In this document: one piece after another, positions 1-33,357 of the stretch
Numbering within the stretch: the first letter of the stretch is position 1
Layout of the letters: each line of letters begins with the position of its first letter
Assembly (NCBI GenBank): GCA_965637545.1
Contig: OZ281494.1
Location: 15,500,001 to 15,564,000, forward strand
Direction: 5' to 3'
Origin: Phallusia mammillata
Taxonomy: Eukaryota
DNA: 64,000 nucleotides
Made by a program: the position numbers and the translations under genes
The notes under the pieces: model-generated
The model's database searches: none
Told to the model about the DNA's origin: nothing
The model's input: only the letters and a program-made list of their open reading frames with translations

Positions 1-3000
1 AATGGATATTGCCTTTAATGTCATTCAGTCATGTATGCTGCCTGATGTTTTGAACTTTGCCAACGAAAACAGTCAGGTACATATGAACCAATTTATTAAT
101 ACTTACAACTTTTAGGTGCTAAGAGAACTTTTGTGTAATGTAATGTTGATGTTTAGACTGCCCTTCATCTTGCTGTTCTTACTGACCAACCACAACTTGT
201 TCGATGCTTGGTTGCTTATGGTGCAAATGTGAACTGCAAGGACAGCTATGGTAGGTTTTACTGTTCTTGTACTATATTATGCTTTTTAACAAATTGATGT
301 GTGGTTTGTTGTTTATTTGTTGTTGTTCTATAAAAAATGTCTTTCGGTAATATCTTTTGTATAATAACTGGGGCTTATTTTTTTGTAGGGAACACTCCTT
401 TACACATTGCTTGTCAGCATGGTTATCCAGTTCATGTAGACATGCTCACATCACCGATAAGCACAGAAGAATACACTGGATTCAGAGAAACAGACGACCT
501 CCCACAGAATGTGAATGAGAAAAACTTTGATGGTAAGTACCAAAACAATTTTGTTAGGCTGAGTTATTGGCAGATGAAACGTCATCAAACATTTTGGGAA
601 ACTCAGGGTGTTAATTCAAAACATCAGAAGAGTCCAAGCATGCCCTAAACCCAAGTGTCCAAATTTGGCCTAATTACAGTTTTAAAGGAAATAGCTGTGC
701 GTAATTGAGCTTGGTGGTCTGTCTGTGCTTAAATTTTGCGCTCGGGAAAGTTTCTCGCATTTCCTCGGACTTGTGTTTGAAAACATCTGCGGTTTGATGC
801 GGTACCTGCAATCACAAGGATCGGGAAGTTTCCTGACGCGCCTGAGGCGTCACACGGATAAAGAATGTCCGCGGTTGTGCTTGTTTCAGATCGCGGGAAC
901 ATGGAATTATGTTGACGCTAGAGATAAGAGCGCAATAATCCGATTGATATTGAACGCGGAGAAGGCGCTGGTAGACACTGCAAATTGCAAAAATTACTAT
1001 TATGGTCTCTTGGGGGCACGAAAATACCTGGCCACTTAATCGAATGTGGGAAATTTATTGGTTTATTTGCAAGGTGTGGCCTGTTAGCATTTGAAACCCC
1101 CTCGTAAAAACAACATTAGTTGTAAAATCCCCGCTACGTGCTTAAACTGCTGGCACGACTCGCAAGGCATATCGAACCAAGCAAACATCCACATTTTAAA
1201 CTGAAACACCAAGAATGCGAGATTTATTGTCTCAGTTAAAAATGATGCATGTTGTGACAAGTATCAGGAAGGATATTCGAGAGTCAGACTGCGCGGAAGC
1301 GAAAAAATGTGGAAGTTTTTTCTATGTCCCCTTGTATGGCGCCTATTAAAACGACGCGGAATGTCCCGCGATTTGTTTCCACACGTCAGCAACGACTGTG
1401 CATCCCCTCCGCAATCCCACAGTTAAAGCGACGAGACGCTGATTCACAGTAAAGTCCCGGATAGTCAAACAATTCGCTCGCCCATTGTTAACGCTTCAGT
1501 GTTTATCTGCATAACGTCTCTGAATCATAGGCGTATAAATGTAGTCAGCAACAACAACAACAACAAGGTTTCAGTATTTGATAAACCCGAGGTCGATTTT
1601 CACCTTACAAAACAATTCTGTCATTTACTACTAACCTACTGGGGAGCTGTTACCATTCTTATCAGGATTAATGGATAAGCGCAAGAAAAAAAATTAACTT
1701 CGGATGTTTGATTAACCTGTTGCCCACACTTCGGAAGGCTCATTTCCCCAGCACATTGTTTAAGATCACGCAGTCATTGAAGTTTGACTAATTTCCTGAA
1801 TCGCGTACGCAAGGTACCTAATGAACAATGCGATGTAACTTTGCTTGTCTGATGCAAATACCAAAGATAGGATGGCTGTAGTTTTCGTTGCGGTTCAAAT
1901 CCGGTTTTTGCTTGGTTCACCTATCTTGGGCATAATGCATGTTAGAAATCATCTCCCTTTTTAAGACGAATGGTATCTTCAACACGTTATCCGCACGGGA
2001 AATTCTGCCATATCGCAGTAATTAATGACAAACAGGGCCTAAAGGCATGGCCCGTCCGTTTTCGACTGACTTGTAATTTCCTAGATGCTAGAAATGTCGA
2101 GTGCCATTAAAACATATGTATTTGCATGTAACATTTCGTGGCCATTCGATTGTAATTTTATAGAGCAAAGGCTGTTGTCGTAAATTCTTTCGGTTATGTT
2201 TGTAATTACGTTACTTTCACTTTACTTTATAAACACTCTTTAACCATTTGTAACCGATTTCTGCGAAAGCGTTTTAGTTTATTGCGTCTAGCTGTAAAGT
2301 TGAGAAAAACTTGACTGTTTTTTTGCCTACGTTGCCCTCTTTAGTTAAGTTCACGTTCAAGGACAAAACATGTAATCTAAGGCGAAAGCAACAAGTACAT
2401 GCTCGAAAATTAATACGTTGCACGGTTAGGAGGCTAACACTGTAATTGGTGCAGGCAACGTAATTCCCCGGCTTTGTTGGCTGCTCACGACGCTTTCTCT
2501 TTCATTGCGCGCCAGACATGAGAACGGGTATTTCTTTATGACCACGCGGCGCGCGCTTATATGGCGTGTGAGCTGGCGGAATTTTTTTACCATTGTGCTC
2601 GAGCGTTTGCTGAGTGGACGCGGGACTTTCTCTGGCTTTGCTTTGTGTGTGCTGTAACTGCCGCGTTTGACCTTCTTCGGCTAATGCCCTTTTACCATCA
2701 GCCCGTCTCACACCTGCCTACTATTTCCAAACGCCCTTAGGCTGTAAAACACTGCGAAATCTTTATCATACAAACGAGATGGGAATTTCAGCGTGAGATC
2801 AGCAACGACCCGAGGTCTAACTTCGTACAGCCGCTGACTCGCATTAATTGCGATATATAGGGATGGTGAATTCCAAACTAAAAGGTCACGCGCTTCAGTG
2901 TAATCTGCTGTGCGCGTTTCCTTTGTTAGACCAGCGCGACTGGATATCCACATCCGAACTTTACATCCTGCGCGTACTTTTCACGGAATAACGCCACAAC

Positions 3001-5935: not shown

Positions 5936-8900
5936 ATGCCTGGATCAAATTCTAGCACATCCTCTCATGAGGATGTGGACGGAGTGCTTCAAGAAAAGTT
6001 GCATTCCTTGAAATCATCTCGGAGTGGGCATTTGGGTGCTGTTACCAAAGCCGAAAATATTGTTTGTAACTTGATGCTAGATGTTTCTAATATCAAGGAA
6101 GTACCAGCTGCAAAGGAAGCTTTTGATAGTGCACTGACAAAGTGCTTGGACTGTTGCAAGGAATACCATTCTGTGATTCCAGATTCACTCTACTCTCAGA
6201 AACAAGAGGCAGTGGACAAGATCAAGTCCCTGGAGGAAAAAGGGGACAACATAAATTCTATGTATCAAACATTTCTACAAAATGCTGCTGTGGAGTTGGG
6301 TTCTACTGGTGGGCATTCGAAAAGCTCACATCACTCAACTGGGTCAAGATTGTCCTCTAAATCCAGTTCACATCGTTCTAGTAGAACAAGCTCAAGATCT
6401 TCACACCACTCACACCATTCCAAGGCTCCTAGTTTGAAATCATTCCACTCTTCTTCTTCAATATCAAGCAGAAGCACTACATACTCAATGAGGGAGGTGC
6501 GGCGTGCTCAGCTAGAAAACAAGCTGACAGAGTCAGAGGCACAATTAACTCTCCAAGCATCAGCTGATGCTGTTAATGATGCACTGATGAAAGCTGAGGA
6601 GATAAAACGTAAGGCCAGAGAAGACGAGGAGGCCTTAAAGATGATGCTTGAAGATGAAAAGGAAGAAAATGCCCAGCGAAGAAGGGCAGAAGAAGAGGCA
6701 AATGCCATGCGTAAAAGGGCAGAAGAAGAGGCCATAGCCAAAAGAAGAAGAGAAGAAGCTGATGCAGAGAAAAGGGCGATTAGAAGAAAAATGGAACAGG
6801 CTGCAGCTCGACGGAAAAGAGAAGAGGAAAGGGCTGAAGCAATTTTAGCCAAGGCAAAAATGGAACATCGACAAAAATCTTACAATGCACAGTTGAAAGT
6901 GCAGCGCAAGAGGCATGAGGTTGACCTGGTTGTACTTGAGGCTGAACCAGTGGGATCCTGTGATTCTCGTCATGAATACAGGTTGGATATGCCCCCACTA
7001 AATCAGATAGATGACGCCACGGTGGGAAGCTCTGCTTGTCTACAGCAGTCTGCCCATGACCTAGCTCCGATGGACTGTCCAATGCCTGGTGAAATGCATA
7101 CCATTTCTGGTTTCACCCCTCTAGCCACAGCAAAGCTGCCACAGCCTGAATATCCTGTCGCTCATCCAGCAGAACAGCTAAATGTTTCTGCCGATCCATA
7201 CTTGCCTGTATGTACACAGACTGACATAAAGCAGGAGACTCACAGTCCTTCTATGGGGCCGGTCTCCAAGTACAAACCTCAGCCAGATGAGAGCTTCACC
7301 AAAGATGACTTTCACTATGGAAAGGCCATGGTGGACTTGGTGGAGAGTACGAAAACCATGCTGCATGGCTTTACACTGCCCAAAAGGGGGCTCCCAAAGT
7401 TCTATGGGAATCCAATGAATTACCACAACTTTATGAAGAAATTTGATGAGATGATCACAAGGCATTTTCCTGATCCTGCTGTACAACTTCAGTACCTTGT
7501 AGACATGTGTGAAGACAAAGCCTATGATGTTGTCCATGGATGTTGTGCCACGAGCCCACCTGAATTGGGTCTTGCTACTGCTCGGGAGTTGCTGAGAGAT
7601 AACTTCGGGCGCATGGACTTGGTGGTAAATGCACATGTCAAAGAGTTGACCAAGGGTCCACCAATTAGGACTGGGGACAATGAAGGTCTTCGTTCTCTTG
7701 CTACAAGTATGACAAATGCTTTAATGGTTTTTCGATCTTTGGGTTGTGAGTCACAGTTGGACTATTCCCAATTCCTAGTGGACATATTTCAGCGACTACC
7801 CAAGCACATGCAAAATACATTTGTCACAGAGGCCAGTTCACTCTACCGAAGGAATGGAAATGTGACATTCAGCAATCTGACATCGTACCTCAACCAGAAG
7901 GTGATGGATTCCAACAACATGTTTGCGGATGCATTGACAACAGTTAAGGAAAGGGATCCAAAGAAGGACAAGCCCCAGAAGAAGAAAGAACATGCTGTGT
8001 TCTCTGCACAAACTACTTTGGGCTCCACATCATGTGAACATGTTGACAAACCTAAACCTCCAGACCAAACAAGGAAGAAGAAGCCACAACCATGTGTGGT
8101 TTGTAACAAACCTCATCCATTATGGGTATGTGATGAGTTCCAGAAAAAGAAACAGTTTGACCGTTGGACAACAGTCAAGAATAACAACTTATGCTTCAAC
8201 TGCTTTTCACCAGACCACATGGCAAATGAGTGTGTCTGCTCCAGAAAGTGCAAGTCTTGTGAAAAACCACATCATACTCTACTTCATCGTGATGAACAGC
8301 GAAATATAGAAAAAACATCCACATCGACTGAGGAAAAGAAGAATGCTGAAAGTCCCAAGGAAAGCTCAACGACATATGTAGCCACTGTTACTACACCCCC
8401 TGCAGGAAGGGACAGGGTTAGACTCAAGGTGGTGCCAGTACATGTGTGGGGAAGGGATCTGAATCGTGTAGTGGAGACATATGCATTTCTGGATGAGGGA
8501 TCTGACACCACATTCTGCACGTCAAATCTGAAACAGAGACTCAAGCTTGAAGGAAAACAAGTTTCCAGAAGACTTAATGGCATAAGTGGCAGTAAGGATC
8601 TGCAGGGATACGAGGTCGGACTGTCCCTACAGGGGATTCAAGAAACAGATTCAATCCGTATTGAGAATGTACTGACGGTGGATGCTCTACCAACACTGAA
8701 GAACAGTATACCTACAATGGAAGATGTAAAGCATTATTCTCATCTGAGGGGATTGGACTTTCCAAAGTTACCTGATGCAGAAGTGGATATTCTCATTGGG
8801 GCCGGTACGCAGGAAGCCCATTCTATCAGGGAAGTGCGAACCGGGAAGCCAAGACAGCCAACAGCTATTCACACTGGACTTGGGTGGACCTTAGTTGGCA

Positions 8901-11900
8901 CTGATGCATCAGATGCATCAGAGGACAGTTGCAATGTTAACTTCGCCACAATTGGCAATAATGAACTACATGACATGTTCCAGAAGATGTATAATCATGA
9001 CTTTATGGATGACAAGTGTTCAAATGATGTCTCTCTATCTATGGAGGACAAAAGGGCACTCGCCATGATGAATTCGACTGTGCAAAGGAAAGGCAAGCAT
9101 TATCAGCTTGCGCTACCATGGAAGAATAAAAATGTAAAGCTACCTTATAACCGTGGAACAGCCGAGAAACGCCTTCTTGGTTTAAAGAGACGATTAAAGA
9201 CAGATCAGTCACTGTTCCAGAAGTACAGTGAAAAGATTAATGACTCGCTGAAGAATGGTCATGCCAGGAAAGTACCAGATGGAAAGGATCCACACCCGGG
9301 AAAGACTTGGTACATTCCACATCACTGCTGCACTGGTGGAAAGTTTCGGGTTGTGTTTGACTGCGCTGCCAAGTATGCAGGCACATCCCTCAATGAAAAT
9401 CTCTTACAAGGACCTGATTTGACCAACAACCTTGTTGGTGTTCTTCTTCGTTTTCGCCAGGAGAAGATTGCATTGATGGCTGACATTAAAGGAATGTTCC
9501 ATCAGGTTTTTGTGGACCCAGATGACTGTGATGCTCTGAGGTTTTTGTGGTGGCCAAATGATGACTTGTCCAAGCCACCTGAGGATTACCAGATGCTGGT
9601 GCATCTTTTTGGGGCAACTTCTTCTCCAAGTTGTGCCAGCTTTGCATTGAGAAAGGTTGCTGAGGATAATGAGAGCAATGCAACAAAGGAAACAACGGAT
9701 ACTGTCCTGCGGAATTTTTATGTAGATGATTGCCTGAAGTCGGTCAAGACTTTAGAGGAAGGTTCCCAGCTAGTCAAGGAACTGGATGAGCTACTTAAGT
9801 GTGGAGGATTTCACCTTACCAAGTACCTGAGTAACAGCAAAGAACTGTTAATGTCTATTAATGAAGATAACCTTGCTCCATCAGTGAAAGACATGGACTT
9901 GGATGGATTGCCAATCGAGAGAGCTTTGGGAGTGTACTGGAACACTGGTACGGACTGCTTCGAGGTCAAAGTGAAGTTGAAACCAAAGCCCTGCACAAGA
10001 CGTGGAATTCTGTCAACAATAAGTCAGTTGTTTGACCCCATGGGGTTTGTGCAACCCTTTATCTTGCCAATCAAAAAGCTTATGCAAGAATTATGCAAAA
10101 GAAACATAGGATGGGATGAAGCTATTCCCACCGAGTTTGAGGTTGCCTGGAAAAAGTGGCTGGGCAATTTATCACTGCTGGAATCAATTACTATTCCTAG
10201 ATGCTTTAAAACAATGGACTACATAAGTGCTGAGCTCCATTGCTTTTGTGATGCAAGCGAAACTGGTTATGGAGCTGTTTGCTACCTTCGCCTGGTAACT
10301 GGTGGTTCCTACCACTGCTCATTTGTGATGGGAAAGTCCAGAGTTTCCCCTTCAAAGGCAGTTACCATTCCCCGGCTTGAACTCACTGCTGCAGTGGTTG
10401 GTGTTAAACTAGCGCAGTTTGTGATTCGTGAGTTGGATCTTGAGTTGGAAAAGGTTGTGTACTGGACAGACTCCACTTCTGTGCTTCAGTACATCAGAAA
10501 TACATCACGCCGCTTTCCGACGTTTGTTGCCAATAGGCTGGCTGTGATTCAAGCAGCCACAGAACCAGAACAGTGGAGACATGTGGATACAAAGCAAAAT
10601 CCTGCAGACATTGCATCTAGGGGTTTTTATCCTGACCAGGTGGACAAGGCAAAGGCATGGTTATCCGGTCCATCATTTTTGTGGAAAGAAGAAAGTTGCT
10701 GGCCAGAACAGCCAGCTGTGTTACAATTGCCAGAAGACCATGAAGATGTTGAAGCCAACACAATTGTAGTAGAAATTGTGCAAAATGGTTTGGACAACTT
10801 GCTAGACAGATACTCTTCATACAATGCTTTACTCAAGGCCACTGGTTGGTTGTTGCGGTTCAAGCAGTACATGATGTGTAAGTTTTCAGAGAAATTACGC
10901 AAACCTGCACCCAAGGCAGGTCTGCTGACGGCAGAGGAAATGGAAACAGCTGTCCATCAAGTGGTGAAGCTGGTTCAGCATCAAGCATTCGGATCTATGT
11001 CATCGGATCTTAAGGAATACCAGAGCTTTTCCCACTACTTGGAATCTCAGCATTCGAATGGATTACATATTCGAAACCGGGCTCTTGGTAGACTTAGCCC
11101 TATGAAAATAAATGGCACTATGAGAGTGGGAGGTCGCCTACAACATGCAACTCTGCCGGAGGACATGAAGCACCCTATGATCTTGCCTAGTCGTCACCAT
11201 GTTACTGGGCTGATTATACATCATTACCATCAGCGAGAAGGACATAGTGGAACTCAACACGTTCTAGCAGCCACCCGTGAGAGGTACTGGATTCTCAAAG
11301 GCCAATCATCTGTTCGTCACTACTTGAAGGACTGCAGAAAATGTCGTTTTTGGAAAGCACAAGCTGGTAGGCAGTTGATGGCACCCTTGCCGGTTTGTCG
11401 TGTTGAGTCTGGACAGTTACCCTTTACTCATGCAGGGGTTGACTACTTTGGCCCTCTAATGGTAAAAATTGGACGCAGTCATGTGAAACGATATGGCTGC
11501 ATTTTTACTTGTATGGCTACAAGGGCTGTACATTTAGAGCTAGCTGGCTCACTGGACACTAGTTCATTCATACAGGCACTTCGTAGATTTGTGCTGAGAA
11601 GAGGATCTACCACTAAACACATATATAGTGACAATGGAACCAACTTCATTGGAGCTGACAGAGCACTCCGCGAAGGGATTAAAGCATGGAATCAACAACA
11701 GATACATACAGAGCTACTACAAAAAGGAATTGAATGGCATTTCAATCCCCCAGCTGCCAGCCACCAAGGTGGTGTATGGGAGAGAATGATTCGCTCTGTG
11801 CGAAAAATTTTGCAGTCACTGACTGGAGACAAGATATTGTCTGAGGAATCTTTGAACACCTTCCTGATAGAAGTGGAATCGATCTTAAACAACAGACCAC

Positions 11901-12313
11901 TGACACCTGTCAGTGATGATCCAAAGGATGGGTCTGCTTTGAAGCCCATTACTTTGTTAGCTGGTGGAATTGAAGCTACATTGCCACCTGGAGAATTCAT
12001 CAAAGCAGATGGCTACAAGAAATCCTGGCGGGCAGTCCAATGGTTGAGCGACCAGTTTTGGAAGCGCTGGGTGAAGGACTATTTGCCACTTCTGCAAAAA
12101 CGCCAGAAGTGGTTGCAACCTGAGAAGAACTTTGAAGTTGGAGATGTTGTGTTGGTAATGGATGCCAATACAAAACGAGGAGTATGGCCCAAAGGACTGG
12201 TCGAGGAGGTCTTTCCAGATCATGACGGGATGGTGCGGAGAGTTCGAGTCAGAACTTATGACTCAACTTTGATGAGGGACATTCGAAAGCTGTGTTTACT
12301 TGAATGTGGCTAA
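5936..12313 (+). CDS. BEL/Pao Gag-Pol polyprotein (2125 aa)
   Basis: Gag DUF1759-like LPKFYGNP; three Cys/His knuckles (CVVC..H..C, CFNC...H...C, CKSC..HHTLLH); protease FLDEGS; RT YVDD; Pao RNase H FCDAS...WTDS; integrase HHCC plus VDYFGP/SDNGTNF/WERMIRSV. Order PR-RT-RH-IN. Confidence 0.97.
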   Translation: MPGSNSSTSSHEDVDGVLQEKLHSLKSSRSGHLGAVTKAENIVCNLMLDVSNIKEVPAAKEAFDSALTKCLDCCKEYHSVIPDSLYSQKQEAVDKIKSLEEKGDNINSMYQTFLQNAAVELGSTGGHSKSSHHSTGSRLSSKSSSHRSSRTSSRSSHHSHHSKAPSLKSFHSSSSISSRSTTYSMREVRRAQLENKLTESEAQLTLQASADAVNDALMKAEEIKRKAREDEEALKMMLEDEKEENAQRRRAEEEANAMRKRAEEEAIAKRRREEADAEKRAIRRKMEQAAARRKREEERAEAILAKAKMEHRQKSYNAQLKVQRKRHEVDLVVLEAEPVGSCDSRHEYRLDMPPLNQIDDATVGSSACLQQSAHDLAPMDCPMPGEMHTISGFTPLATAKLPQPEYPVAHPAEQLNVSADPYLPVCTQTDIKQETHSPSMGPVSKYKPQPDESFTKDDFHYGKAMVDLVESTKTMLHGFTLPKRGLPKFYGNPMNYHNFMKKFDEMITRHFPDPAVQLQYLVDMCEDKAYDVVHGCCATSPPELGLATARELLRDNFGRMDLVVNAHVKELTKGPPIRTGDNEGLRSLATSMTNALMVFRSLGCESQLDYSQFLVDIFQRLPKHMQNTFVTEASSLYRRNGNVTFSNLTSYLNQKVMDSNNMFADALTTVKERDPKKDKPQKKKEHAVFSAQTTLGSTSCEHVDKPKPPDQTRKKKPQPCVVCNKPHPLWVCDEFQKKKQFDRWTTVKNNNLCFNCFSPDHMANECVCSRKCKSCEKPHHTLLHRDEQRNIEKTSTSTEEKKNAESPKESSTTYVATVTTPPAGRDRVRLKVVPVHVWGRDLNRVVETYAFLDEGSDTTFCTSNLKQRLKLEGKQVSRRLNGISGSKDLQGYEVGLSLQGIQETDSIRIENVLTVDALPTLKNSIPTMEDVKHYSHLRGLDFPKLPDAEVDILIGAGTQEAHSIREVRTGKPRQPTAIHTGLGWTLVGTDASDASEDSCNVNFATIGNNELHDMFQKMYNHDFMDDKCSNDVSLSMEDKRALAMMNSTVQRKGKHYQLALPWKNKNVKLPYNRGTAEKRLLGLKRRLKTDQSLFQKYSEKINDSLKNGHARKVPDGKDPHPGKTWYIPHHCCTGGKFRVVFDCAAKYAGTSLNENLLQGPDLTNNLVGVLLRFRQEKIALMADIKGMFHQVFVDPDDCDALRFLWWPNDDLSKPPEDYQMLVHLFGATSSPSCASFALRKVAEDNESNATKETTDTVLRNFYVDDCLKSVKTLEEGSQLVKELDELLKCGGFHLTKYLSNSKELLMSINEDNLAPSVKDMDLDGLPIERALGVYWNTGTDCFEVKVKLKPKPCTRRGILSTISQLFDPMGFVQPFILPIKKLMQELCKRNIGWDEAIPTEFEVAWKKWLGNLSLLESITIPRCFKTMDYISAELHCFCDASETGYGAVCYLRLVTGGSYHCSFVMGKSRVSPSKAVTIPRLELTAAVVGVKLAQFVIRELDLELEKVVYWTDSTSVLQYIRNTSRRFPTFVANRLAVIQAATEPEQWRHVDTKQNPADIASRGFYPDQVDKAKAWLSGPSFLWKEESCWPEQPAVLQLPEDHEDVEANTIVVEIVQNGLDNLLDRYSSYNALLKATGWLLRFKQYMMCKFSEKLRKPAPKAGLLTAEEMETAVHQVVKLVQHQAFGSMSSDLKEYQSFSHYLESQHSNGLHIRNRALGRLSPMKINGTMRVGGRLQHATLPEDMKHPMILPSRHHVTGLIIHHYHQREGHSGTQHVLAATRERYWILKGQSSVRHYLKDCRKCRFWKAQAGRQLMAPLPVCRVESGQLPFTHAGVDYFGPLMVKIGRSHVKRYGCIFTCMATRAVHLELAGSLDTSSFIQALRRFVLRRGSTTKHIYSDNGTNFIGADRALREGIKAWNQQQIHTELLQKGIEWHFNPPAASHQGGVWERMIRSVRKILQSLTGDKILSEESLNTFLIEVESILNNRPLTPVSDDPKDGSALKPITLLAGGIEATLPPGEFIKADGYKKSWRAVQWLSDQFWKRWVKDYLPLLQKRQKWLQPEKNFEVGDVVLVMDANTKRGVWPKGLVEEVFPDHDGMVRRVRVRTYDSTLMRDIRKLCLLECG

Positions 12314-13607: not shown

Positions 13608-16600
13608 ATGAGTAAACAGGTTCCACTGTATAAGCGTGGCCTTGCGCAGCACGTTTAAAGATTTTACTACCATGTTGTCATATTGATTATTCTGATCTCG
13701 GATACAAAATTACCCAAAACAAACATTAGTACTCAAGTTATTTTGGAAAACATGACTTGGTTTGAGCCTTTACTTTGCCGTGATACAAGTATATCCACTA
13801 AAGACAAGAAATTAAGTATAAGACATAAATTGACTTGAGACCCGAACTGACAGCATAACTTTAGACAAAAAACATCAATCGTATAAACAGAAACAGTTTT
13901 TGTTCAAACTACAGACTTCGACTGAAGGATAAAAGCGCATGCCTCCACGGACGCAAGCGGGAATTTCCTTTGGTCTGAGCATTCTAGTCTTGAGTACGGC
14001 AGATGTAACCCAAACCAGTGCAAGCAGGCGAAAAACAGCTAAACCGCCTATCCACGGCAAATATGAAGTTTTGTTTCCTCGTAAACACAATGTGACCTTT
14101 TCCAGCACGAGACAAATAGGCTTTGTGTCCAAAGTAGTTTTTACGATTTATTTGTCATACTCTTAATACGTCACCCTATCTACCTAACAGCAATCAGCTG
14201 CGAGCCATATTATGGAGCGTTTAAGTATAAGGAACGTTTATTTAGTTCCGAAATCTCTTTCATCTGCCTCATGTGTTGTAAAAACATTAAAAAGTTTAAC
14301 CATTGAGTTTGTCATTTGCTATTGGCATAGTGAGTGCATGGTATTTTAATTGGTGTATGTCGAAACAAAACGTATTTGTGCTGCGCAAAATATGATCTGA
14401 TATACCAAACATATAACGGATCACGGTAAATTAAAAATACCTTAAGGTTATAGGAGCTCGCCTTAACACGATTACGTCTTGCTGGCATGCAGGCAATTTG
14501 CGTAAGTTATTTTGATCGGCGAGAAAGTATTGATAAAAAATCCCAAAGCACAGACCGACAGGAAAAATTACCCTATTTAGGCTTTTTGCCTGGCAGCACA
14601 GAAACAATGGAGTTTCAAAAAAGGTATTGTAACCGTAAACGCAACAAAAGGGGTTAGACTTTATACGGGAAGGCGGCGTTAGCACTGAGCAAGAAACTTA
14701 CCACACGGAAATACAGGAAATGTTGACCTTTAAAATTCATACTAGCGCGATGATACGCCATGGATTTCCCCTTAGAATTAGATAACATTTATACGTCACG
14801 ATGGTCCGCACGTACTTCCGCTTATGTTTTGAAACGAAATTTTGTACGTTTGAACTCAGCGAACTGAGAATAAATTACAACCATAGCGGATTTATTTTAA
14901 TGTTTATCACAAAAACACACAAAACCGAAAAAAGTCCGTGAGTTGTGTATAATTTGATGCGCTCGAGGCTATTTGAGCTGAAAATGCTCTCCGGGTCAAA
15001 CGACAAAGGTCAATGATTTTGTCTTTTAAGCAGTGAAAACAATTTATGCAATCTCTGTGTGCTTTTCTCAAACGGCAAAAGTTTACCAGATCAAAAGATT
15101 GACTTCTAAGGGTATAACCCCTGCAGTTGTACGTGCCACACTTACAATATGGAGCGTTTGTTATGAAATGACAACGTGTTGTTGTGCTGCGTTTGATTTT
15201 GAACATACATCAATTACAAGTATTTGGTATACGCGTTTGTCATGAAATGGCAACGTACCACAATTCTGCTAATTAACTGGTCAAGGTATGGTACTGCATG
15301 GGGAATTTTCTCGTACAAGTGGTGCAATTTTGATTTGTTTACTTTGACGTAAGTACACATTCAGAAAATGGTTTCACCACAGCATGTAATTTAAACATTA
15401 CAATGCGCACACCAACTATTTTAGTTTTTACAGAAATGCCCTATTTGAAGAAACGGTTCTATACTCGATTTACGGCAACGGTTGCTGCAAATAAAAAGCG
15501 TTTTGGACAGTTTGGAGAAAAATGAAAGAAGGGTTTGTGGGTCTGGGTTAGTTGTTCGTTAATGATCCAGAAAACGGCAAATGTGTAATTTTTATTCATT
15601 ATATATAACAGCGAAACCAAAAAAACTCGCCCAATTCCAAATTACAGTAGGTCCTTGCCCCCTAATGAGGAACAAATTACTAATAAAGGTCTCTTCACTA
15701 TATCCAGTGACAGATCATGACTCTTACCACAACAAACAATAAAAGTAAATATATCGTGATGTTAAAAGGGATCTATGTGATGAGCAAATGAGCAACTATA
15801 TGCCAATGAAGTTATACGGTTTCAGTTCTCTTTTCAGCCAGTTTCCGTGCTCCAAGCTTAAACTAAAATATCAGTGTTGCGCCATTCTAGGCATGGAACC
15901 GAAATTTGGGGACCAGAAAACAAAAAATGGATTAACGCACCCACAACGTCATGACGACGCTCTATACGTTACTGCTCAGACCCGTTGACTGATGAAAATG
16001 TATTCGTCAGACAGAAGTCATCAAATCGTTTCAGGCCTTGTCCAAGGATCATCAGTTGAAAACCACTGCGCTAGATAAACTTACAAAACGTGTCATAACG
16101 TACTTTGGACGTCGGAGCAAGTCCGTTTTTATACGCAAATGCCACAAAACCAGCACGACCACGTAAGCTTACAAATAAAGCCAATATAGTATGCGTTTCC
16201 CTGGAAAATATCTTGAAGGTTTGATACAGGAAGACCTGCTTCCGAAATGACTCGAGTCGCACCGAAAATAAACGTAACGCGTACTGCATCGTGTCAGACC
16301 AGATTGTTTTCCCCATCTAAGTTTATCAGGATGTGAATCACATGTTTAGGATAAACTTTCGTTGGAAATGACTGTTATGGTGTTCCGGACAAATGTCCGT
16401 TTGTGCGCTTGGTTGACAAATTTAAATTCACGACAAAATTTAAATTATCAAAAATTGTTGGCATTTAAAATCCCCAAAAACTGTTGTATTTCTGTAAACA
16501 AAAAGCTGTCGTTTAGAACAAACGGCTTCATTTTTAAAATGGCTTTCAGATGCCAATTCTTTAATTAACGTTACTCAATGTAAGTAGGCCTATTAAAAGA

Positions 16601-25900: not shown

Positions 25901-27664
25901 CAATGGAATGTGCATGGGGTTATGCTGAACGTCAGATGGAAAAACCGATTGGATAAGGATAAGGAAACAACATGGAAATCACATACAATATACCCTTCAC
26001 AATGCAATGTTAAAGGTGATTTACCGGACAAAAGAATGAGCCATAAAATTTTCCAATGTAACGTTCCGGTTTGAGTACCAACATAACAAACACAGCATGA
26101 TATTTGGTCCGTTATTTCGCCACAATAAGCAAAAATCCAGTCGGCAGAAAAATGTCAGGAGTTTCTTCCCTTCCAAATGTTGTCCAGTAATGATTTTTTG
26201 TTTTTCTGTGTAAAAATGTGACTACAATAGCAGTTAAGACCAAATGTGACGTTGGCCACAGAATTATGACAATCAGTTACAAATACAATACCAAATTAAC
26301 CTTGACTTGAATTACCAGATTTGAGGAAAAATTTTCCTGAAACCACAATTTTACCTGACAAGTCATGGTACATATTTTTAGTATTTATTTGTTTTATTGT
26401 GCAATAAAACAAAACGAAACAAGTGATTTATTTATAGTGTTTGCTGAGTCATGGCAGTGTTATGACAACATGGAGCTATGGAAACCAAATTGCGACAATA
26501 CTGCGACAACTTTCACTTCTTACACATTGATTTTATTTTACATTTTTATGAAGGCGGTCATAGAAATTTGCCTGATGTGTTCCATGGTGGTTTCAAAAAT
26601 GACTTTGGGGATCACATTACAAAATTGTGTAAACTTTATTTACCAAATTTGTTATTTACCAAAGAAAAGGCGTCTTGCCTTTACCTTTTTACGAAGATTT
26701 AACCCAAAAGTACGAATTCTGATTTTACGTCTACAAAAACGCGCGAAAACCGTTAGCCGGTTCTCTACTGACACCTACCGGTTATGTGTATTGATGTGAC
26801 TTCGGCGCGTCCGAAACACCGTTTTGAGATAGTTGCACTGGTGTTTAGCAATTTGACGGAAGTACATACAATGTTTTACAGATCAGCTTTTTGCATGGCC
26901 AGTTCGGTGACTTTTTGCGTCCAGAAACACCAGACGAAAACAACAACAACTTGGTCAAAAAATGCCCCTGTAAATAACAACAGTGATTTTGACCAACGGC
27001 AATGGGTTTATTTCAGTTAAAACTAAGATTCCGTGTTGCAACTCTTAAGGAGTGAACAAATCCATGGCCACAAATCCAAAATAAAAGAAAATATATATAC
27101 AACTATAGTAATTTCTTTTCACGATGGAAGAACATCATGCAAAACAACCAGCGGTGCTGCATTTCTGTAACTCTGGTTTGTTGTTTTGATGCCAACAGGC
27201 AATCTGAATCAAAATTGGATTCTTTGATAGCTTGTCTAGTGTTTCCGGCTATTGCAAGAAAGTTTTCAGGTCCACATCTTGTTGGTTCTGCATGTTTTCT
27301 TTTCAGCTATTGAATTTGCGCTGGCATTTACCACACCGGAAATATTGCACCAGTTATAAATGGTGTTCAATTGGAATGCATGTTCAGTGGCCAACTGCAA
27401 GGAGTAAGCTGACAGCTCAATAAGGTTGAAAGCAACTTTTATGCCAGAGTGTGCATGGGTGTGTAGGAGCAGAGGACTTGAAAATGCTGCAGAAAAATTG
27501 AGCCTTAATAAGGAGCAAAATAATTTCGTTGTATATCACGTTGTAATGGGGTAATTTTGTAGTACTGTGTTGAATTTTGATGTCGATCATGCCTTTTTGT
27601 GTTTATCTGTGAGGTATTTAGGAGGAAATATAGTGTTTTGCAAACTCTCTGGTGTGCGATTGAG

Positions 27665-30600
27665 ATGCAGACCCAAATCACTCCATTACTATTGCTGGTC
27701 GCATTCTGTGCGACTTTTGTTGGAGCGGGGACGTGTAAGTTGGTTTTGTTAAGTCTGTATACATGTAATAATTTTGCAGAAAAAGGTTACTGAGCTTGTA
27801 CCACAAAAGTTCCGCCACCGACTTGCAGGAGGTTTTAACTTTTATTTTTCCACATAGTTCAAAGATTGGCGGCGGACAATGGTCAGTTTCATTCTCCAGA
27901 AAATCCAAACTCCGAAATTTCTTCAACCCACCTGATAAAAACAAGACCAAACAGGCTGGTTGCTCTGCGATTCGACGTACTTGACCTCGGCCCCGACGAC
28001 AGCGTAATGGTGAGTTACAATCTAATTAACCCTAACAAGCAAAACTATAAAAAGGTACCAACCTAGAAAAGTGTTCAACTACTTTCAATATTGAAAGTAT
28101 ACGGTCTAGATTTTCGCTTGGTTTCAAAGAAAAAAAAAAATTAAAAAATATATAGTATCGTATACCTTATTATTTAATAATCACTTTTTACGCGGGCCCG
28201 GTTTTTTGTAGCATGTTACTTTTTTACTTGTTTTTAAATTCACTATTTATACTAAAAAAAACTTTTATAGAAACTATAATGTGTTTTGAAATGGCGAACA
28301 ACTTTGTAGTTTTTGAGCCAAACAAGTTACTTTCAGTTATCTTAATCAAAATGTTGCGTTTTTTTACATCTGTAACTAGAGGATTTTTTAGGAATGTCGG
28401 TGTAAATTTGTTAAACTCCAGTTTGAAAGCAAGCAGAAAATTGGCATGAGACGGGCAATCAAGCGCGCTAGGCATCCGAATTGGCCGCCCGTTAGACCGG
28501 CAGATTTAGGTGTTGCACCATACGTTTTCTTTCAGAAAATAAATTACGTGAAATTTTATTAAGCAGTGTAATCTTGTATCCCAAACAAGTCTTATTTCCA
28601 AATATCACTTTTCAAAATATTGCCCGATCTGTTTGGTTTCTTTCCATCTGAAAAAAAAAAAAATTCGTGCAAAAAACTTGATTATATAGTTACCATGAAA
28701 GTATTGGTTGATGCAATTGATTTATCTCTTTTTTTCTTCAATCATTTATGTATCCAATGAATGCTTCAAAATAACCTTTCGTTTTCCTGAAAACTGTGCA
28801 TTTTAGTCAGTTTTTCCCCTGTATGGCGGAAGCAATGTGCCAAGTGGCGTTTCGATCGAAATCAATTTGTCTACTTTTATTGTACTATTTTTGCTCATGG
28901 CGCCCCTACGTCGCTGTTTCCGAGCAATTAAAAATGCAGCTGCAAACGACCTCAAAACCCAGCTGCAAATTATCCTTATTCAGTGCTGCGCCAGATAAAC
29001 AAATTTGTTGTAAGTGACGGCCCTTCTGCATCGGATTTTTTGGAGAAATTTATATTAACTATTCGAATAAATTAATTTGTACGATTCGCAAAACTTCTAT
29101 CAAATTCGCAAAACTTTGCTTTTAATTTTTTTTTTGGAGTTAGCCTCGTGACAATTACTCAACTTGCCAAGTAGTTACAGCATTACTGACAATTTAATTT
29201 AAACCATTTGTAACAGATTCGTGATGGACGTCGGAGTACTCTATACCGCGTGTACAAGCGACAGTTGGACAGGACAATTCAATTAAGCTTTGAGGACACA
29301 GAGAGGTATGTCTTATAGTTTGGCGTTTGAAAGTTAAAGGCACCTAAAAATCTCGTTCGTACAGGTATTCTCCTGAAAGAGAACCTGAGGTGGTAGAAGA
29401 ACCAGTGCGCTTCGATTCTACTTCAGGCAGAGTGTTTGTTTCATACTACACAAGAAATTCTGGCAACAAGCGCGGATTCAGAGCAACGTACGAAAGTAAG
29501 GGGGATTTACTGAAATCTTCTATTGCTTGCTGTTTACTTTTGTATGAGTTTATTTCGCTTGGTGAAAGAACACTTAGCTACACAATTGCACTGAACAACC
29601 ACCAAGTCGGAAATAGCTGCAAAATGTTGAAACGTTAAGGAGGGCAAAATAGTAGATGCCACAATTGCTAAATTATGACTAAACGCGCTGTAGCTACACC
29701 GTAATAATACCATGTGATTGCGAAATAACCTCTAACACTCAGGTTACAATGTTTTTCTAATCTTGTATCAAACTTAAATTTCTCTTTTAACACATGAAGT
29801 CTTGTTTCTTTAGCCTATCCAAGAGGCATGTGTCAGGTTGATGACCTAAATATTAATGACCCAGCGCCAGCTTGTGACGAAATTACAATGTCGAAAGTTG
29901 CCACTAGATGCTCCCACACTTTGCGATGCCAAAGTAACTACACTACGTACGGGTAAGTAAAGCTAACTTCCAATCTGCTTACTGTTCAAATAGTCTTATT
30001 TAGCATACGGCTTGATTCAGACATGTATGTGTAAATATTATGCAAGAAAGAATAGATTTGATTGCGCTTCTATGTCATCATTTATTAAAATATCATTTGA
30101 ACTTAGACGTTGTCTGTTTGTTCCTATTGTTACTTAATGTTTGTCATGAAAACAAAGTGTGAAAATGTTTGAATACCATCTACATACTGACACCTAAAGA
30201 ACTAAAATATTTTTTAATAACTAACACTGAAAAAGCAGCAAACGTTTTTATGTGTGTTAAAATAGGTTGTGTTAAAACAATGTGTTAAATGAAAACGAAA
30301 CGATTTTCAATTACAAAGAAAACTTGCTCATTTCAGTCCCTGATAATATATTTAATACAGTTGCTAAAACTGGATAACGTTCCATCATCAGAATGTAACC
30401 CATGCCTTTGAAAACCTTAAGATTTGACACTTTGACTCTTATCGACATATTTTTCACACCAAATGACAAAAGAGCAATAACAGCCCTACTTCTAAGAACT
30501 ATTTTTAAAGGGGCGATTGTTTTGTACTGGGTTATATTTATGGTGCGAATTGTGCAGTGAAGCTGTGTGCATAGATGGTGTTTGGACAGACAACGCAGAA

Positions 30601-31735
30601 TGCCTACCAGACGAGACACTGGTCGAACAATGTTTTACCGAAGATGATGCCCTTGTAAGTCATAAATAACTCGAATCACTAAATTTGTTCAAACAAAACT
30701 CCTTGTTGTTATGCGTCATTTCTTTATTCTTTTATGTTTTAGATTTAAACTATGAAGAATTCTTTTTTAATTTCGTGCGATAAAAATTTTGAAAAAAAAC
30801 GCAAAAATACAAAACTGAAGTCCTGTACTCTCCATACAGCTTAGACCGGTGTTAAGCTGTTCCATTAAAAGATTACATAGTTGACGAAAGGGTGGGCAAC
30901 AAGATTTTAGTTAAAAAACGGTCGAGAAACGACTGGTTAAGATTACTTTCCAACCAAATTTATACATCGTATGCATCTAATAACAAGCAAAAGCCTTGTG
31001 TTGTCGATTCAATTTTTTTAATTTTATTTAACTTACCAACGGGTTGTTTTGTTTTTAGACTGATTGCGCTTTTTCAAGCAAAGAACTAATAAAGTTTTAC
31101 TCTAAAATGGAGGAGAGTAGCGAGGTGTTTGAGAACGAAGAATCCGGTTTGGGAAGATCGTTCGGATGGAGTAAAAAATGCACGGATAAAATATGCCACA
31201 AGAGAGGACACCAATACACATTGAATTGTAGGCGACGTTTTGGTAAGTGGGTTAAGTAAGTTGCTCCCCATAATGTTCCCCAAACTTTATAACTAGGACG
31301 ATTATTTTTTGACCTAAAAAATAAAACATTTTGACCAACAAATTGAAAATTTTGACAAATTTTCACGTTAAAAATTTTTGTTTACAAAAATTTGACGTAT
31401 GAAGAACTTAAAACTATAATGAATGCAAACAAAGCAAATACCGATATTTTTTGTTGTCGGGGATTACTTAGTGGTGTTATCACTGTCGTAAGTGAAACCT
31501 ATCTTTGTTAGCCTTTTCATGATTAATTCTCAGGACTTTTGCGTTTTCGGGTGTTTTGCTCAAATATGTCAAATTTATCTGTGTTTTTTTTCGATAGAAA
31601 TAATACTCATACGCAGACCATGATATAACCCTAAAGAGCCCAGTTGTTTTTGCAGCCCGGCGTCCTCGACTCAGAAGAGCTTGCATGATCTGTCGACTTA
31701 TATTTTGTGGGCGTTCGATCCAAAGTTTTGCCTAG
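27665..31735 (+). CDS. Secreted CUB + Sushi/CCP protein with acidic spacer and cationic Cys-rich C-terminus (313 aa)
   Basis: Eight exons (27665-27734, 27858-28009, 29217-29305, 29365-29495, 29814-29952, 30558-30654, 31059-31242, 31656-31735) total 942 nt in frame. Signal peptide MQTQITPLLLLVAFCATFVGA. CUB motifs GQFHSP, VALRFDVLDL, DSVMIRDG, RGFRATYE. CCP-like C..LRCQSNY..GEAVCIDGVWTDNAEC. The last exon is the least certain. Confidence 0.8.
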
Positions 31736-32152
31736 AAGGAGATGACCGGTGAATGAGAGAATGTGCATTGGTTGTAAAACTTATACTCAGTTCGTGCATG
31801 CATATAGGCTTCATTTTATCGATGGTAACCTTAATTTCGCCACTATACCAGTCAAACATACATGTATCTTTCCCATAATGTGTTTTTGTGTTTGCAAAAT
31901 ATACTGTCACTTGTAAGGTTGTGTGTTGCAGTTTATGTTGCCGTTATATGTCGGCAAAAAGCAGTGATTTTCAACTTTTTACTCGCGTACCACTTTAAGG
32001 TTTTGTACAGCGTTGGCGTACAACTTGTGCCCAGACAATCGTTGAATCGTTGAATCGTTGCTCGTATAATATATTATGAAAACAGGCTTCGTCACCACAG
32101 CCATCGTCAATACTGTACTCTTTCTTAAGTCATAGATATGTTTACCTTAAGC

Positions 32153-32467
32153 CATTGGTTCTCAAACTGTGGTACGCGTACCACTAGTGGTACGCCGGGT
32201 CTTTTCAGGTGGTACGCTAGTAGCTTTCCGTGATACCTATTTAAGTCCGATCTAAATTGCAACTTAACTACAAAACTAATCAACCCTGATGGTTTGGGCG
32301 AAACTCGTGTTTTAGACATGCTTTTGAAATTGCTAAATATGCTACCAGGTTGAGAAAATGGGCCTATTTTTAGTCTATCAATTCAAATAGGGTTTAGGTT
32401 AGATGGTATGCAGCCGTAGAAAAAGTTGTCAGGTGGTACGCGAACCGGAAAAGATTGAGAACCACTG
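32153..32467 (+). mobile_element. hAT-type MITE, second copy of family A
   Basis: Colinear with 22666-22986 (ctcaaactgtggtacgcgtaccactagtggtacgcc...aagattgagaaccactg); TSD not preserved. Confidence 0.85.
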
Positions 32468-33357
32468 CCGGATGAAAGTAATTGTAGCACAAGAAAATCT
32501 TAAGTTATTGTCTAATTATATTTTTATTTAACTTAGGTCAACTACACATGAAGTTAACTCGAAAGGCATTTGCGTCCACAGATTATTAATTATCATTGAT
32601 TAACACAGGAGTCACCAAACTTTTTTCGGGCCGGATAAGTTAAATAATGATCCGGCAAACCAAAAAATGAAAAATTACCAAGTAGAGATTTCAAACATAG
32701 TAAGAATAATTATCAAGTCAAGTTAAATGTTAAAAACAAATCTTGGGCAAATCTTTTTAACTGTCATTTACAAACAAAAACATGACACACTGGCGACTGC
32801 TACTAGAAGGTGAACATTTATCATAATGAAAAAGTCGTCAACAGTCATTATATAAGCCCAGAAATCCCAAAATGGCCCAGGCAGTTTTACTTTTATTGTT
32901 GTCCAGCACATCATAGGCTACTTTTCGGCCTTGTTTTTTGGCTTACACATATGACACTGCAAATAGTAGAACCATGTGCTTAACTTTATGAAGTAACTTG
33001 TAAACAAAATTGATCGGCAAGCAAAACGAACCCGTTTGCTACCCTCTGTGCGTCACTGTACTATTTTTACACCCTCAAGGCTAAATAACGAAGCAAGCGG
33101 CGGTGGCATTGGTCGCTCTTATCCATCTAACGACGATGTTTTGTTGCAATTAACGGGATTAACTACGTACGGAAAACAGACGTCTCAGGTTGTGTTTGAC
33201 TAATTTTTTGCAGTCGAAACTTTTTTATTTTTAATGCAACATGTGACGAACAGCGACTGGTGTATTTTTAGCTTCACCGTTTTTTTGCGGTATAAAAGTA
33301 AAGGAGTGTACCCAATGTGCAGCAATCCACTGAAACAGAGATAGACAAATATTTGAG

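What the first reader, a model, noticed from the sequence alone, without database searches (positions are those of the whole stretch)
27665..31735. CUB-Sushi protein ending in an acidic propiece and a +14 six-cysteine peptide: candidate new antimicrobial/effector precursor
Seen: the spliced product is signal peptide - CUB (no cysteines visible) - CCP - acidic spacer MEESSEVFENEESGLGR - SFGWSKKCTDKICHKRGHQYTLNCRRRFARRPRLRRACMICRLIFCGRSIQSFA. The tail is 54 aa with 15 K/R, 1 D and 6 Cys. Established: an anionic propiece that neutralises a cationic 6-Cys mature peptide is the design of defensin-type precursors, and CUB and CCP are complement/recognition modules. Inference: a recognition-module carrier that releases a cationic peptide by cleavage after GR. 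It is the first gene after 14 kb of kappaB-like sites, so it may be NF-kappaB-inducible. I do not recognise this architecture from any known family.
Basis: partly seen in the sequence, partly recalled or inferred. Interest (0 to 1): 0.85.

Follow-up and report, generated by a model that had tools for sequence, protein, structure and literature searches.

The report
Secreted CUB-Sushi protein, orphan cysteine-rich tail
A probable sea-squirt gene encodes a secreted CUB-Sushi protein whose end, an acidic stretch followed by a very basic six-cysteine tail, is kept in one sister gene and matches no known family; whether it yields an antimicrobial peptide is untested.

Summary
The gene model holds.

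One paralog lies 13 Mb away on the same chromosome. It has the same eight exons and phases, all 14 mature cysteines, an identical tail spacing (C-x4-C-x10-C-x13-C-x2-C-x4-C) and an invariant G-R-S-F. This supports the disputed exon 7/8 junction without RNA.

Three results weaken the defensin-like reading:
- The acidic "spacer" is as conserved as the tail, including its hydrophobic positions.
- The extreme charge belongs to this copy only (-14/+14 here, -7/+5 in the paralog).
- The cysteine spacing fits no defensin class I know.

I found no relative of the tail in Pfam, PDB sequences, 1.84 billion protein representatives, the ESM Atlas or JGI metagenomes. kappaB-like sites are not enriched upstream. 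No RNA run was available.

My best reading is a lineage-restricted secreted binding protein with a new C-terminal cysteine module that binds polyanions. Release at GR|SF is possible but unshown.

All searches were made exon by exon.

The parts
27665..27734 (+). Exon 1: start codon and signal-peptide-like hydrophobic leader (23 codons + 1 nt, phase 1 out)
   Evidence: The paralog has an equivalent 73-nt first exon with the same phase. The signal peptide is judged by eye; no predictor was run.
27858..28009 (+). Exon 2: N-terminal third of the CUB domain, no cysteine
   Evidence: Pfam CUB, profile 5-51, 12.5 bits. Paralog exon 2: profile 5-52, 18.3 bits. 44% identical to the paralog.
29217..29305 (+). 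Exon 3: middle of the CUB domain (begins I-R-D-G)
   Evidence: 52% identical to the paralog exon. It lies between the two Pfam-matched parts. No Pfam hit on its own.
29365..29495 (+). Exon 4: C-terminal third of the CUB domain
   Evidence: Pfam CUB, profile 79-110, 18.4 bits. Paralog: profile 80-110, 13.1 bits. 55% identical to the paralog.
29814..29952 (+). Exon 5: first part of the Sushi/CCP module, with 4 Cys (two beyond the usual count)
   Evidence: Same length (139 nt) in the paralog, 44-48% identical, all 4 Cys and V-A-T-R-C-S-H invariant. No Pfam hit on the piece.
30558..30603 (+). Exon 6, first part: end of the CCP module (Cys3, G-x-W, Cys4)
   Evidence: A profile of exon 6 hits only complement factor H CCP modules in PDB sequences, best E 0.0076.
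30604..30654 (+). Exon 6, second part: very acidic linker with an invariant T-L-V-E-Q-C (first Cys of the C-terminal module)
   Evidence: Whole exon 6 has net charge -10 here and -4 in the paralog.
31059..31151 (+).
   Evidence: Alignment A1: C3, F5, L10, I11, Y14, S20, E22, F24, E25 invariant. Net charge to the end of G-R is -4 here and -3 in the paralog. AF2 of exon 7 alone puts a helix at 7-19, at low confidence.
31152..31163 (+). Invariant G-R-S-F motif, the proposed cleavage site (after R)
   Evidence: Identical in both paralogs. It lies in the low-confidence stretch 19-39 of the AF2 model. Cleavage itself is untested.
31158..31242 (+). Exon 7, last part: first half of the basic tail (3 Cys, net +7), ending in a phase-1 GTAAGT donor
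   Evidence: Exon 7 is 184 nt in both paralogs.
31656..31735 (+). Exon 8: second half of the basic tail (CxxCxxxxC, net +7) and the TAG stop
   Evidence: The paralog has a phase-1 AG acceptor about 540 nt after its exon 7. It is followed by Ala, the same CxxCxxxxC and a stop 13 codons later. That motif occurs about 1e-4 per codon and frame in this window.

Best explanation
This is a real gene, probably functional and restricted to its lineage, in what is probably a sea squirt. It encodes a secreted modular protein:
- a signal peptide;
- one cysteine-free CUB domain;
- one Sushi/CCP module with an extra cysteine pair;
- a conserved C-terminal module of about 105 residues with eight invariant cysteines and no detectable relative.

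In this copy they form an extreme charge dipole, about -14 followed by +14.

The mechanism I consider most likely is inferred, not shown. The disulfide-locked basic tail binds polyanions such as sulfated tunic or cell-surface glycans, or microbial surfaces. CUB and CCP supply protein-protein contacts. The neighbouring acidic segment masks the tail within the molecule. Cutting by a trypsin-like protease at the invariant G-R|S-F could unmask or free the tail, but nothing here requires it.
For: - Gene model: the frame is open with canonical splice sites.
- Family size: the genome holds exactly two members.
- Paralog: it has the same eight exons and phases, and exons 5, 6 and 7 have identical lengths. 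All 14 mature cysteines, the tail spacing and G-R-S-F are conserved at 34-59% identity per exon.
- CUB: four colinear partial Pfam hits.
- CCP: the exon 6 motif hits only factor H CCP modules.
- Conservation: the spacer is 33% identical (11 of 33) and the tail 36% (10 of 28), my count from the invariant positions. The spacer's hydrophobic positions are conserved.
- Charge: the acidic and basic halves change together between copies, -14/+14 against -7/+5.
- Other DNA: contigs of two further public runs keep the frame. Exon 7 carries one S-to-A change and one synonymous change.
Against: - No RNA evidence was found. The only runs holding this locus are DNA.
- No orthologue from another species could be examined. 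The conservation rests on one paralog.
- The joined protein was not searched or folded, so a remote match of the whole C-terminal module to a known fold cannot be excluded.
- AF2 on exon 7 alone is uninformative (pLDDT 51).
- Polyanion binding and masking are inferred from charge alone.
Confidence: 0.45

Rival explanations
1. The protein is a precursor: the CUB-CCP part is a carrier, the acidic segment neutralises the tail, and cleavage after G-R frees a +14 peptide with three disulfides that kills microbes. That would be a new antimicrobial peptide family.
For: - The tail composition is exactly as described.
- G-R-S-F and the six-cysteine spacing are invariant in the paralog.
- The acidic and basic charges balance in this copy, -14/+14.
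- The stretch around G-R is modelled without structure, at low confidence.
- From general knowledge, not tested here: L-G-R followed by a small residue resembles sites cut by complement- and clotting-type serine proteases.
Against: - The paralog tail is only +5.
- The spacer is as conserved as the tail, with conserved hydrophobic positions, and two more invariant cysteines lie upstream.
- The spacing C-x4-C-x10-C-x13-C-x2-C-x4-C fits none of the alpha, beta, big or CS-alpha-beta defensin patterns, or the knottin pattern, as I recall them.
- No Pfam, PDB or Atlas match.
- There is no dibasic or furin-type site at the proposed cut.
- There are no expression or induction data, and kappaB sites are not enriched.
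Confidence: 0.15
2. A latent secreted ligand built like PDGF-C/D. The N-terminal CUB(-CCP) part keeps a basic, cysteine-rich C-terminal signalling domain inactive until the hinge is cut. The tail would then act on a receptor, not on microbes.
For: The order of parts is the same: signal peptide, CUB, hinge with a conserved Arg site, then a basic disulfide-rich C-terminal domain. Strict conservation of the cysteine spacing suits a specific fold.
Against: No PDGF/VEGF or other cystine-knot family is detected on exons 7 or 8. The 54-residue tail is shorter than a PDGF growth-factor domain, by my recollection. No receptor or expression data exist.
Confidence: 0.1
3. The C-terminal module joins copies of the protein, like the C-terminal core of C4b-binding protein. 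Two cysteines and an amphipathic helix directly after the last CCP would form disulfide-linked oligomers, and the basic end would add matrix retention.
For: Two invariant cysteines (in T-L-V-E-Q-C and D/N-C) lie immediately after the CCP. A segment with conserved hydrophobic spacing follows and is modelled as a helix.
Against: No Pfam hit to the C4BP oligomerisation domain on the pieces. The helix model has low confidence. Eight cysteines can all pair within one chain.
Confidence: 0.1
4. The model is not a working gene as drawn. It may be unexpressed, decaying, or spliced differently at its 3' end.
For: No RNA support could be obtained. No AATAAA or ATTAAA lies within 1.7 kb after the stop. 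No homologue was found outside this genome.
Against: Two diverged copies both keep open frames of 313 and 318 codons, the splice phases, every cysteine and the terminal exon. That is hard to explain without selection on the protein.
Confidence: 0.1

Closest known systems
Non-catalytic CUB/CCP products of the MASP/C1r/C1s gene family (MAp19/sMAP, MAp44)
   Same: Small secreted proteins made only of CUB and CCP-type modules, ending in a short unique tail. They sit in a complement and recognition context.
   Different: From general knowledge, those have CUB1-EGF(-CUB2-CCP1) with cysteine-containing CUBs. This gene has one cysteine-free CUB, no EGF, one CCP, and a tail module of about 105 residues with eight cysteines. 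No sequence relationship beyond the generic domains was found.
Defensin-type and other antimicrobial peptide precursors with an anionic propiece (alpha-defensins, big defensins)
   Same: An acidic segment precedes a cationic six-cysteine C-terminal peptide, and the charges balance in this copy.
   Different: The cysteine spacing is unlike any defensin class. The carrier is a 200-residue CUB-CCP protein. The acidic part is conserved like a structural element. The charge is not kept in the paralog. No family match was found.
PDGF-C / PDGF-D (CUB domain, hinge, basic cystine-knot growth factor domain)
   Same: An N-terminal CUB domain is followed by a hinge with an Arg site and a basic, disulfide-rich C-terminal domain. 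In PDGF-C/D the CUB must be cut off for activity.
   Different: No PDGF domain is detected. A CCP module is interposed. The tail is much shorter and its cysteine pattern differs.
Horseshoe-crab Factor C Sushi peptides, and basic cysteine-containing heparin-binding tails (VEGF-A exon 7, class 3 semaphorins)
   Same: Cationic stretches next to or inside CCP or C-terminal modules bind polyanions (LPS, heparin). This is the working model preferred here.
   Different: No sequence similarity was found. Here the basic part lies outside the CCP and has its own six-cysteine pattern. Binding is untested.
CSMD / SEZ6-type CUB-Sushi proteins
   Same: CUB and Sushi modules stand side by side.
   Different: Those are large, multi-repeat transmembrane proteins. 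This one is a 313-residue secreted protein with one module of each and an orphan tail.

Membership tests
CUB domain (Pfam PF00431) | Match to the CUB profile over its length | tested here: met
   Exon pieces match colinearly: e2 to profile 5-51 (12.5 bits) and e4 to 79-110 (18.4 bits). The paralog gives 5-52 (18.3 bits) and 80-110 (13.1 bits). Each piece is below the 21.4-bit cut-off alone, but the two pieces together exceed it. The joined domain was not scanned.
CUB domain (Pfam PF00431) | The usual four (or two) conserved cysteines forming disulfides | tested here: not met
   There is no cysteine in exons 2-4 of either paralog. This is an atypical, cysteine-free CUB.
Sushi/CCP/SCR (Pfam PF00084) | Match to the Pfam Sushi profile | tested here: inconclusive
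   No hit on exon 5 or exon 6 taken separately, in either paralog. The module is split by an intron and was not scanned joined.
Sushi/CCP/SCR (Pfam PF00084) | Four cysteines with the invariant Trp between Cys3 and Cys4 (C..G.W.....C) | tested here: met
   C-I-D/N-G-x-W-x5-C is invariant in both copies. The exon 6 profile hits only factor H CCP modules in PDB sequences, best E 0.0076. Candidates for Cys1 and Cys2 at the right spacing lie in exon 5.
Defensin-type antimicrobial precursors | Six cysteines in one of the class-specific spacings (alpha, beta, big, CS-alpha-beta) | tested here: not met
   The spacing is C-x4-C-x10-C-x13-C-x2-C-x4-C in both paralogs. It has no terminal CC pair and no CxxxC...CxC. 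The class patterns are taken from general knowledge.
Defensin-type antimicrobial precursors | Anionic propiece balancing a cationic mature peptide | tested here: inconclusive
   -14/+14 in this copy and -7/+5 in the paralog. The design is present, but its strength is not conserved, and the acidic part is conserved like a structural element.
Defensin-type antimicrobial precursors | Proteolytic release and antimicrobial activity of the mature peptide | not testable with these tools
   This needs peptidomics and activity assays.
MASP-related non-catalytic proteins (MAp19, MAp44) | CUB1-EGF(-CUB2-CCP1) order, arising from a MASP gene | tested here: not met
   The eight exons hold no EGF module and no second CUB. 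No protease exons were looked for downstream.
PDGF-C/D | PDGF/VEGF cystine-knot domain after the CUB | tested here: not met
   No PDGF family hit on exons 7 or 8 at E up to 10.

The most novel reading that the evidence does not exclude
A new family of host-defence effectors in tunicates. A complement-style CUB-CCP carrier would hold a +14, three-disulfide peptide of a new fold inactive against its own acidic segment. A trypsin-like (complement or clotting type) protease would free it at the invariant G-R|S-F, joining recognition modules and a killing peptide in one gene.
Probability: 0.12. Interest if true: 0.7.

Novelty: new variant of a known kind. Interest (0 to 1): 0.35.

Why it matters
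If the tail is a working module, it is a new cysteine-rich domain attached to two classic recognition modules in the closest invertebrate relatives of vertebrates. Its built-in acidic/basic pairing around an invariant Arg site makes masking and unmasking of a polyanion-binding or membrane-active peptide directly testable.

As it stands, this is a well-supported but uncharacterised two-member gene family. It has no expression data and no cross-species support. Fast-evolving orphan tails are common in tunicate genomes, so the surprise is moderate.

Tried and rejected
- **RNA support:** The 'RNA?' runs of the same species label covered only dispersed repeats.
- **Relatives of exon 7:** a two-sequence profile against 1.84 billion representatives gave one hit, P0001. 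This is a 3091-aa repeat protein without the cysteines, matched 12 times by a short acidic stretch, so I rejected it as spurious. At that library size a relative as diverged as the paralog (about 40 bits) would fall near or below the reporting threshold, so distant orthologues are not excluded.
- **Exons 7 and 8 in the other libraries:** the Pfam hits were sub-threshold and unrelated (zf-UBP, Hjc). PDB sequences gave chance hits with E above 0.1. The ESM Atlas feature search of exon 7 gave nothing.
- **JGI metagenome scans:** profiles of exon 6 and exon 5 had no confirmed hit.
- **AF2 of exon 7 alone:** pLDDT 51, too poor for a fold search.
- **kappaB enrichment:** rejected.
- **An earlier exon 6 acceptor at 30510:** rejected because the frame hits a stop (and my reading).
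- **Literature:** searches for a CUB-Sushi antimicrobial or tunicate protein of this kind found nothing relevant.
- I did not use complex prediction, because no protein-protein binding claim is made.
Full report
**What is there**

Reading 27000-32500 and tracking phases exon by exon gives eight exons on the + strand. All have GT donors and AG acceptors.

| Exon | Coordinates |
|---|---|
| 1 | 27665-27734 |
| 2 | 27858-28009 |
| 3 | 29217-29305 |
| 4 | 29365-29495 |
| 5 | 29814-29952 |
| 6 | 30558-30654 |
| 7 | 31059-31242 |
| 8 | 31656-31735 |

The lengths sum to 942 nt, which is 313 codons plus TAG. The split codons read F, R, T, G and A. Exon 6 has to begin at 30558, because an earlier AG at 30510 runs into a stop.

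- a hydrophobic leader;
- about 125 residues without cysteine;
- a cysteine-containing module;
- a very acidic stretch;
- after G-R, 54 residues with 15 K/R, 1 D, no E and 6 Cys.

Every search below used single exons by reference.

**The domains**

Pfam on the exon pieces gives CUB for exon 2 (profile 5-51, 12.5 bits) and exon 4 (profile 79-110, 18.4 bits). The paralog's exons 2 and 4 match the same parts of the profile (18.3 and 13.1 bits). Four colinear partial hits make the CUB assignment secure. It is an unusual CUB, with no cysteine in either copy.

The Pfam Sushi model does not score on exon 5 or exon 6 alone. However, exon 6 carries C-I-D/N-G-x-W-x5-C. A profile of exon 6 searched against all PDB sequences returns five hits, all complement factor H CCP modules aligned on exactly that motif (best E 0.0076). 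With suitably spaced cysteines in exon 5, this is a CCP module that carries one extra cysteine pair.

**A paralog supports the model**

Searching the window's own 240-Mb genome with exons 7, 5 and 4 finds exactly one other locus, on the same contig 13 Mb away and on the minus strand. Exons 2 to 7 are colinear there, at 34-59% identity.

Reading that locus gives an eight-exon, 318-codon gene with the same phases. Exons 5, 6 and 7 have identical lengths in the two genes: 139, 97 and 184 nt. All 14 cysteines of the mature protein are conserved, distributed 4, 3, 4 and 3 over exons 5 to 8.

The paralog's last exon was not found by BLAST. It lies about 540 nt after its exon 7, behind a polypyrimidine tract and an AG in phase 1. 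It starts with the same split Ala codon, carries the same CxxCxxxxC, and stops 13 codons later. That motif occurs about once per 10,000 codons per frame in this window, so finding it in the right frame downstream of both genes is not chance.

This is the best available substitute for RNA evidence of the 31242/31656 junction.

**RNA evidence is lacking**

The only public runs that hold the locus are DNA, since their contigs run through the introns. The small runs labelled 'RNA?' touch only dispersed repeats. The DNA contigs keep the frame open. Exon 7 shows one Ser-to-Ala change (31101) and one synonymous change (31136).

**The tail**

In both copies the spacing after the invariant G-R-S-F is identical: S-F-x5-C-x4-C-x10-C-x13-C-x2-C-x4-C. 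The tail is therefore a constrained structure. Three points weaken the defensin-like reading.

1. The 'acidic spacer' is not a loose linker. From the upstream invariant T-L-V-E-Q-C and D/N-C to G-R it is as conserved as the tail: 11 of 33 positions against 10 of 28 identical, my count. The conserved positions include a hydrophobic pattern (L, I, F/Y, Y ... V/I, F) typical of an amphipathic helix. With the two upstream cysteines, the C-terminal region has eight invariant cysteines and looks like one module of about 105 residues.
2. The extreme charge is particular to this copy. The acidic part from exon 6 to G-R is -14 and the tail +14 here, against -7 and +5 in the paralog. The two halves do change together, which fits electrostatic pairing, but that rests on two sequences only.
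3. The spacing fits none of the defensin, big-defensin, CS-alpha-beta or knottin patterns known to me.

No family matches exons 7 or 8:

| Library searched | Result |
|---|---|
| Pfam | sub-threshold noise only |
| PDB sequences | chance hits only |
| ESM Atlas features | nothing |
| 1.84 billion protein representatives | one spurious repeat protein |
| JGI metagenome contigs | nothing |

The representative search has a sensitivity limit. At that library size only matches above roughly 40 bits are reported, so orthologues as diverged as the paralog would be missed.

AF2 on exon 7 alone is poor (pLDDT 51). It suggests a helix at residues 7-19, a hairpin at 44-57 and no confident structure around G-R. 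I did not use that model for a fold search.

**The promoter claim**

The 14 kb upstream of the gene follows a BEL/Pao element. It holds two canonical kappaB matches, at 13959 and 19288, and none within 8 kb of the ATG. The count for the whole window is within shuffled expectation. Sites with one mismatch are no denser there than elsewhere. The sequence gives no reason to call the gene NF-kappaB-inducible.

**The organism**

Earlier notes of this scan call the genome a probable sea squirt. A GH6-type match in the genome fits the tunicate cellulose synthase, from general knowledge. I did not check further.

**Verdict**

It belongs to a two-member family, restricted to its lineage, of secreted CUB-CCP proteins with a C-terminal cysteine module that I could not place in any known family.

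My preferred mechanism (confidence about 0.45) is a secreted binding protein. Its disulfide-locked basic tail would bind polyanions and would be masked by its own acidic segment. Release at G-R|S-F as an antimicrobial peptide remains possible (about 0.15). A PDGF-C-like latent ligand and a C4BP-like oligomerisation core are further options (about 0.1 each). The remaining probability is that the model is not expressed as drawn.

Literature searches found no described protein of this kind.

Noticed in passing
window 5936-12313 (+): One uninterrupted ORF of 2125 aa, with gag-like zinc knuckles and protease/RT/integrase-like content. It lies just upstream of the 14-kb ORF-poor stretch, and another note of this scan covers a BEL/Pao element here. 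It appears intact.
   Followed up: no
window 29545-29620, 31294-31374 and 32156-32430: Short dispersed repeats in intron 4, intron 7 and the 3' flank. Summed contig depth there is a hundred to several hundred times that of the unique sequence in two DNA runs, with many joints and loose ends. They are probably high-copy MITE/SINE-like elements.
   Followed up: no
L004 about 2885-2891 (G000:C1, minus strand): The paralog's exon 2 appears to end at a GC donor (ATG|GCAAGT) instead of GT. Phase and homology both require this position.
   Followed up: partly
L004 about 1240-1345 (minus strand), intron 5 of the paralog: A tRNA-like stretch (with a ...GGTTCGAACCCCG... box-B-like motif followed by a poly-A run) directly after the exon 5 donor. 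ARAGORN calls no tRNA. It is possibly a tRNA-derived SINE.
   Followed up: partly
G000:C3:28480812-28481030 (-): A glycoside hydrolase family 6 match (29.9 bits with its neighbours, over the Pfam cut-off). It is absent from the 14 control genomes and fits the GH6-like part of tunicate cellulose synthase.
   Followed up: no
window 31668-31681: The tail of this copy contains R-L-R-R followed by A, a furin-type R-x-R-R motif, just before the fourth tail cysteine. It is absent from the paralog, so it is probably a by-product of the arginine enrichment.
   Followed up: no
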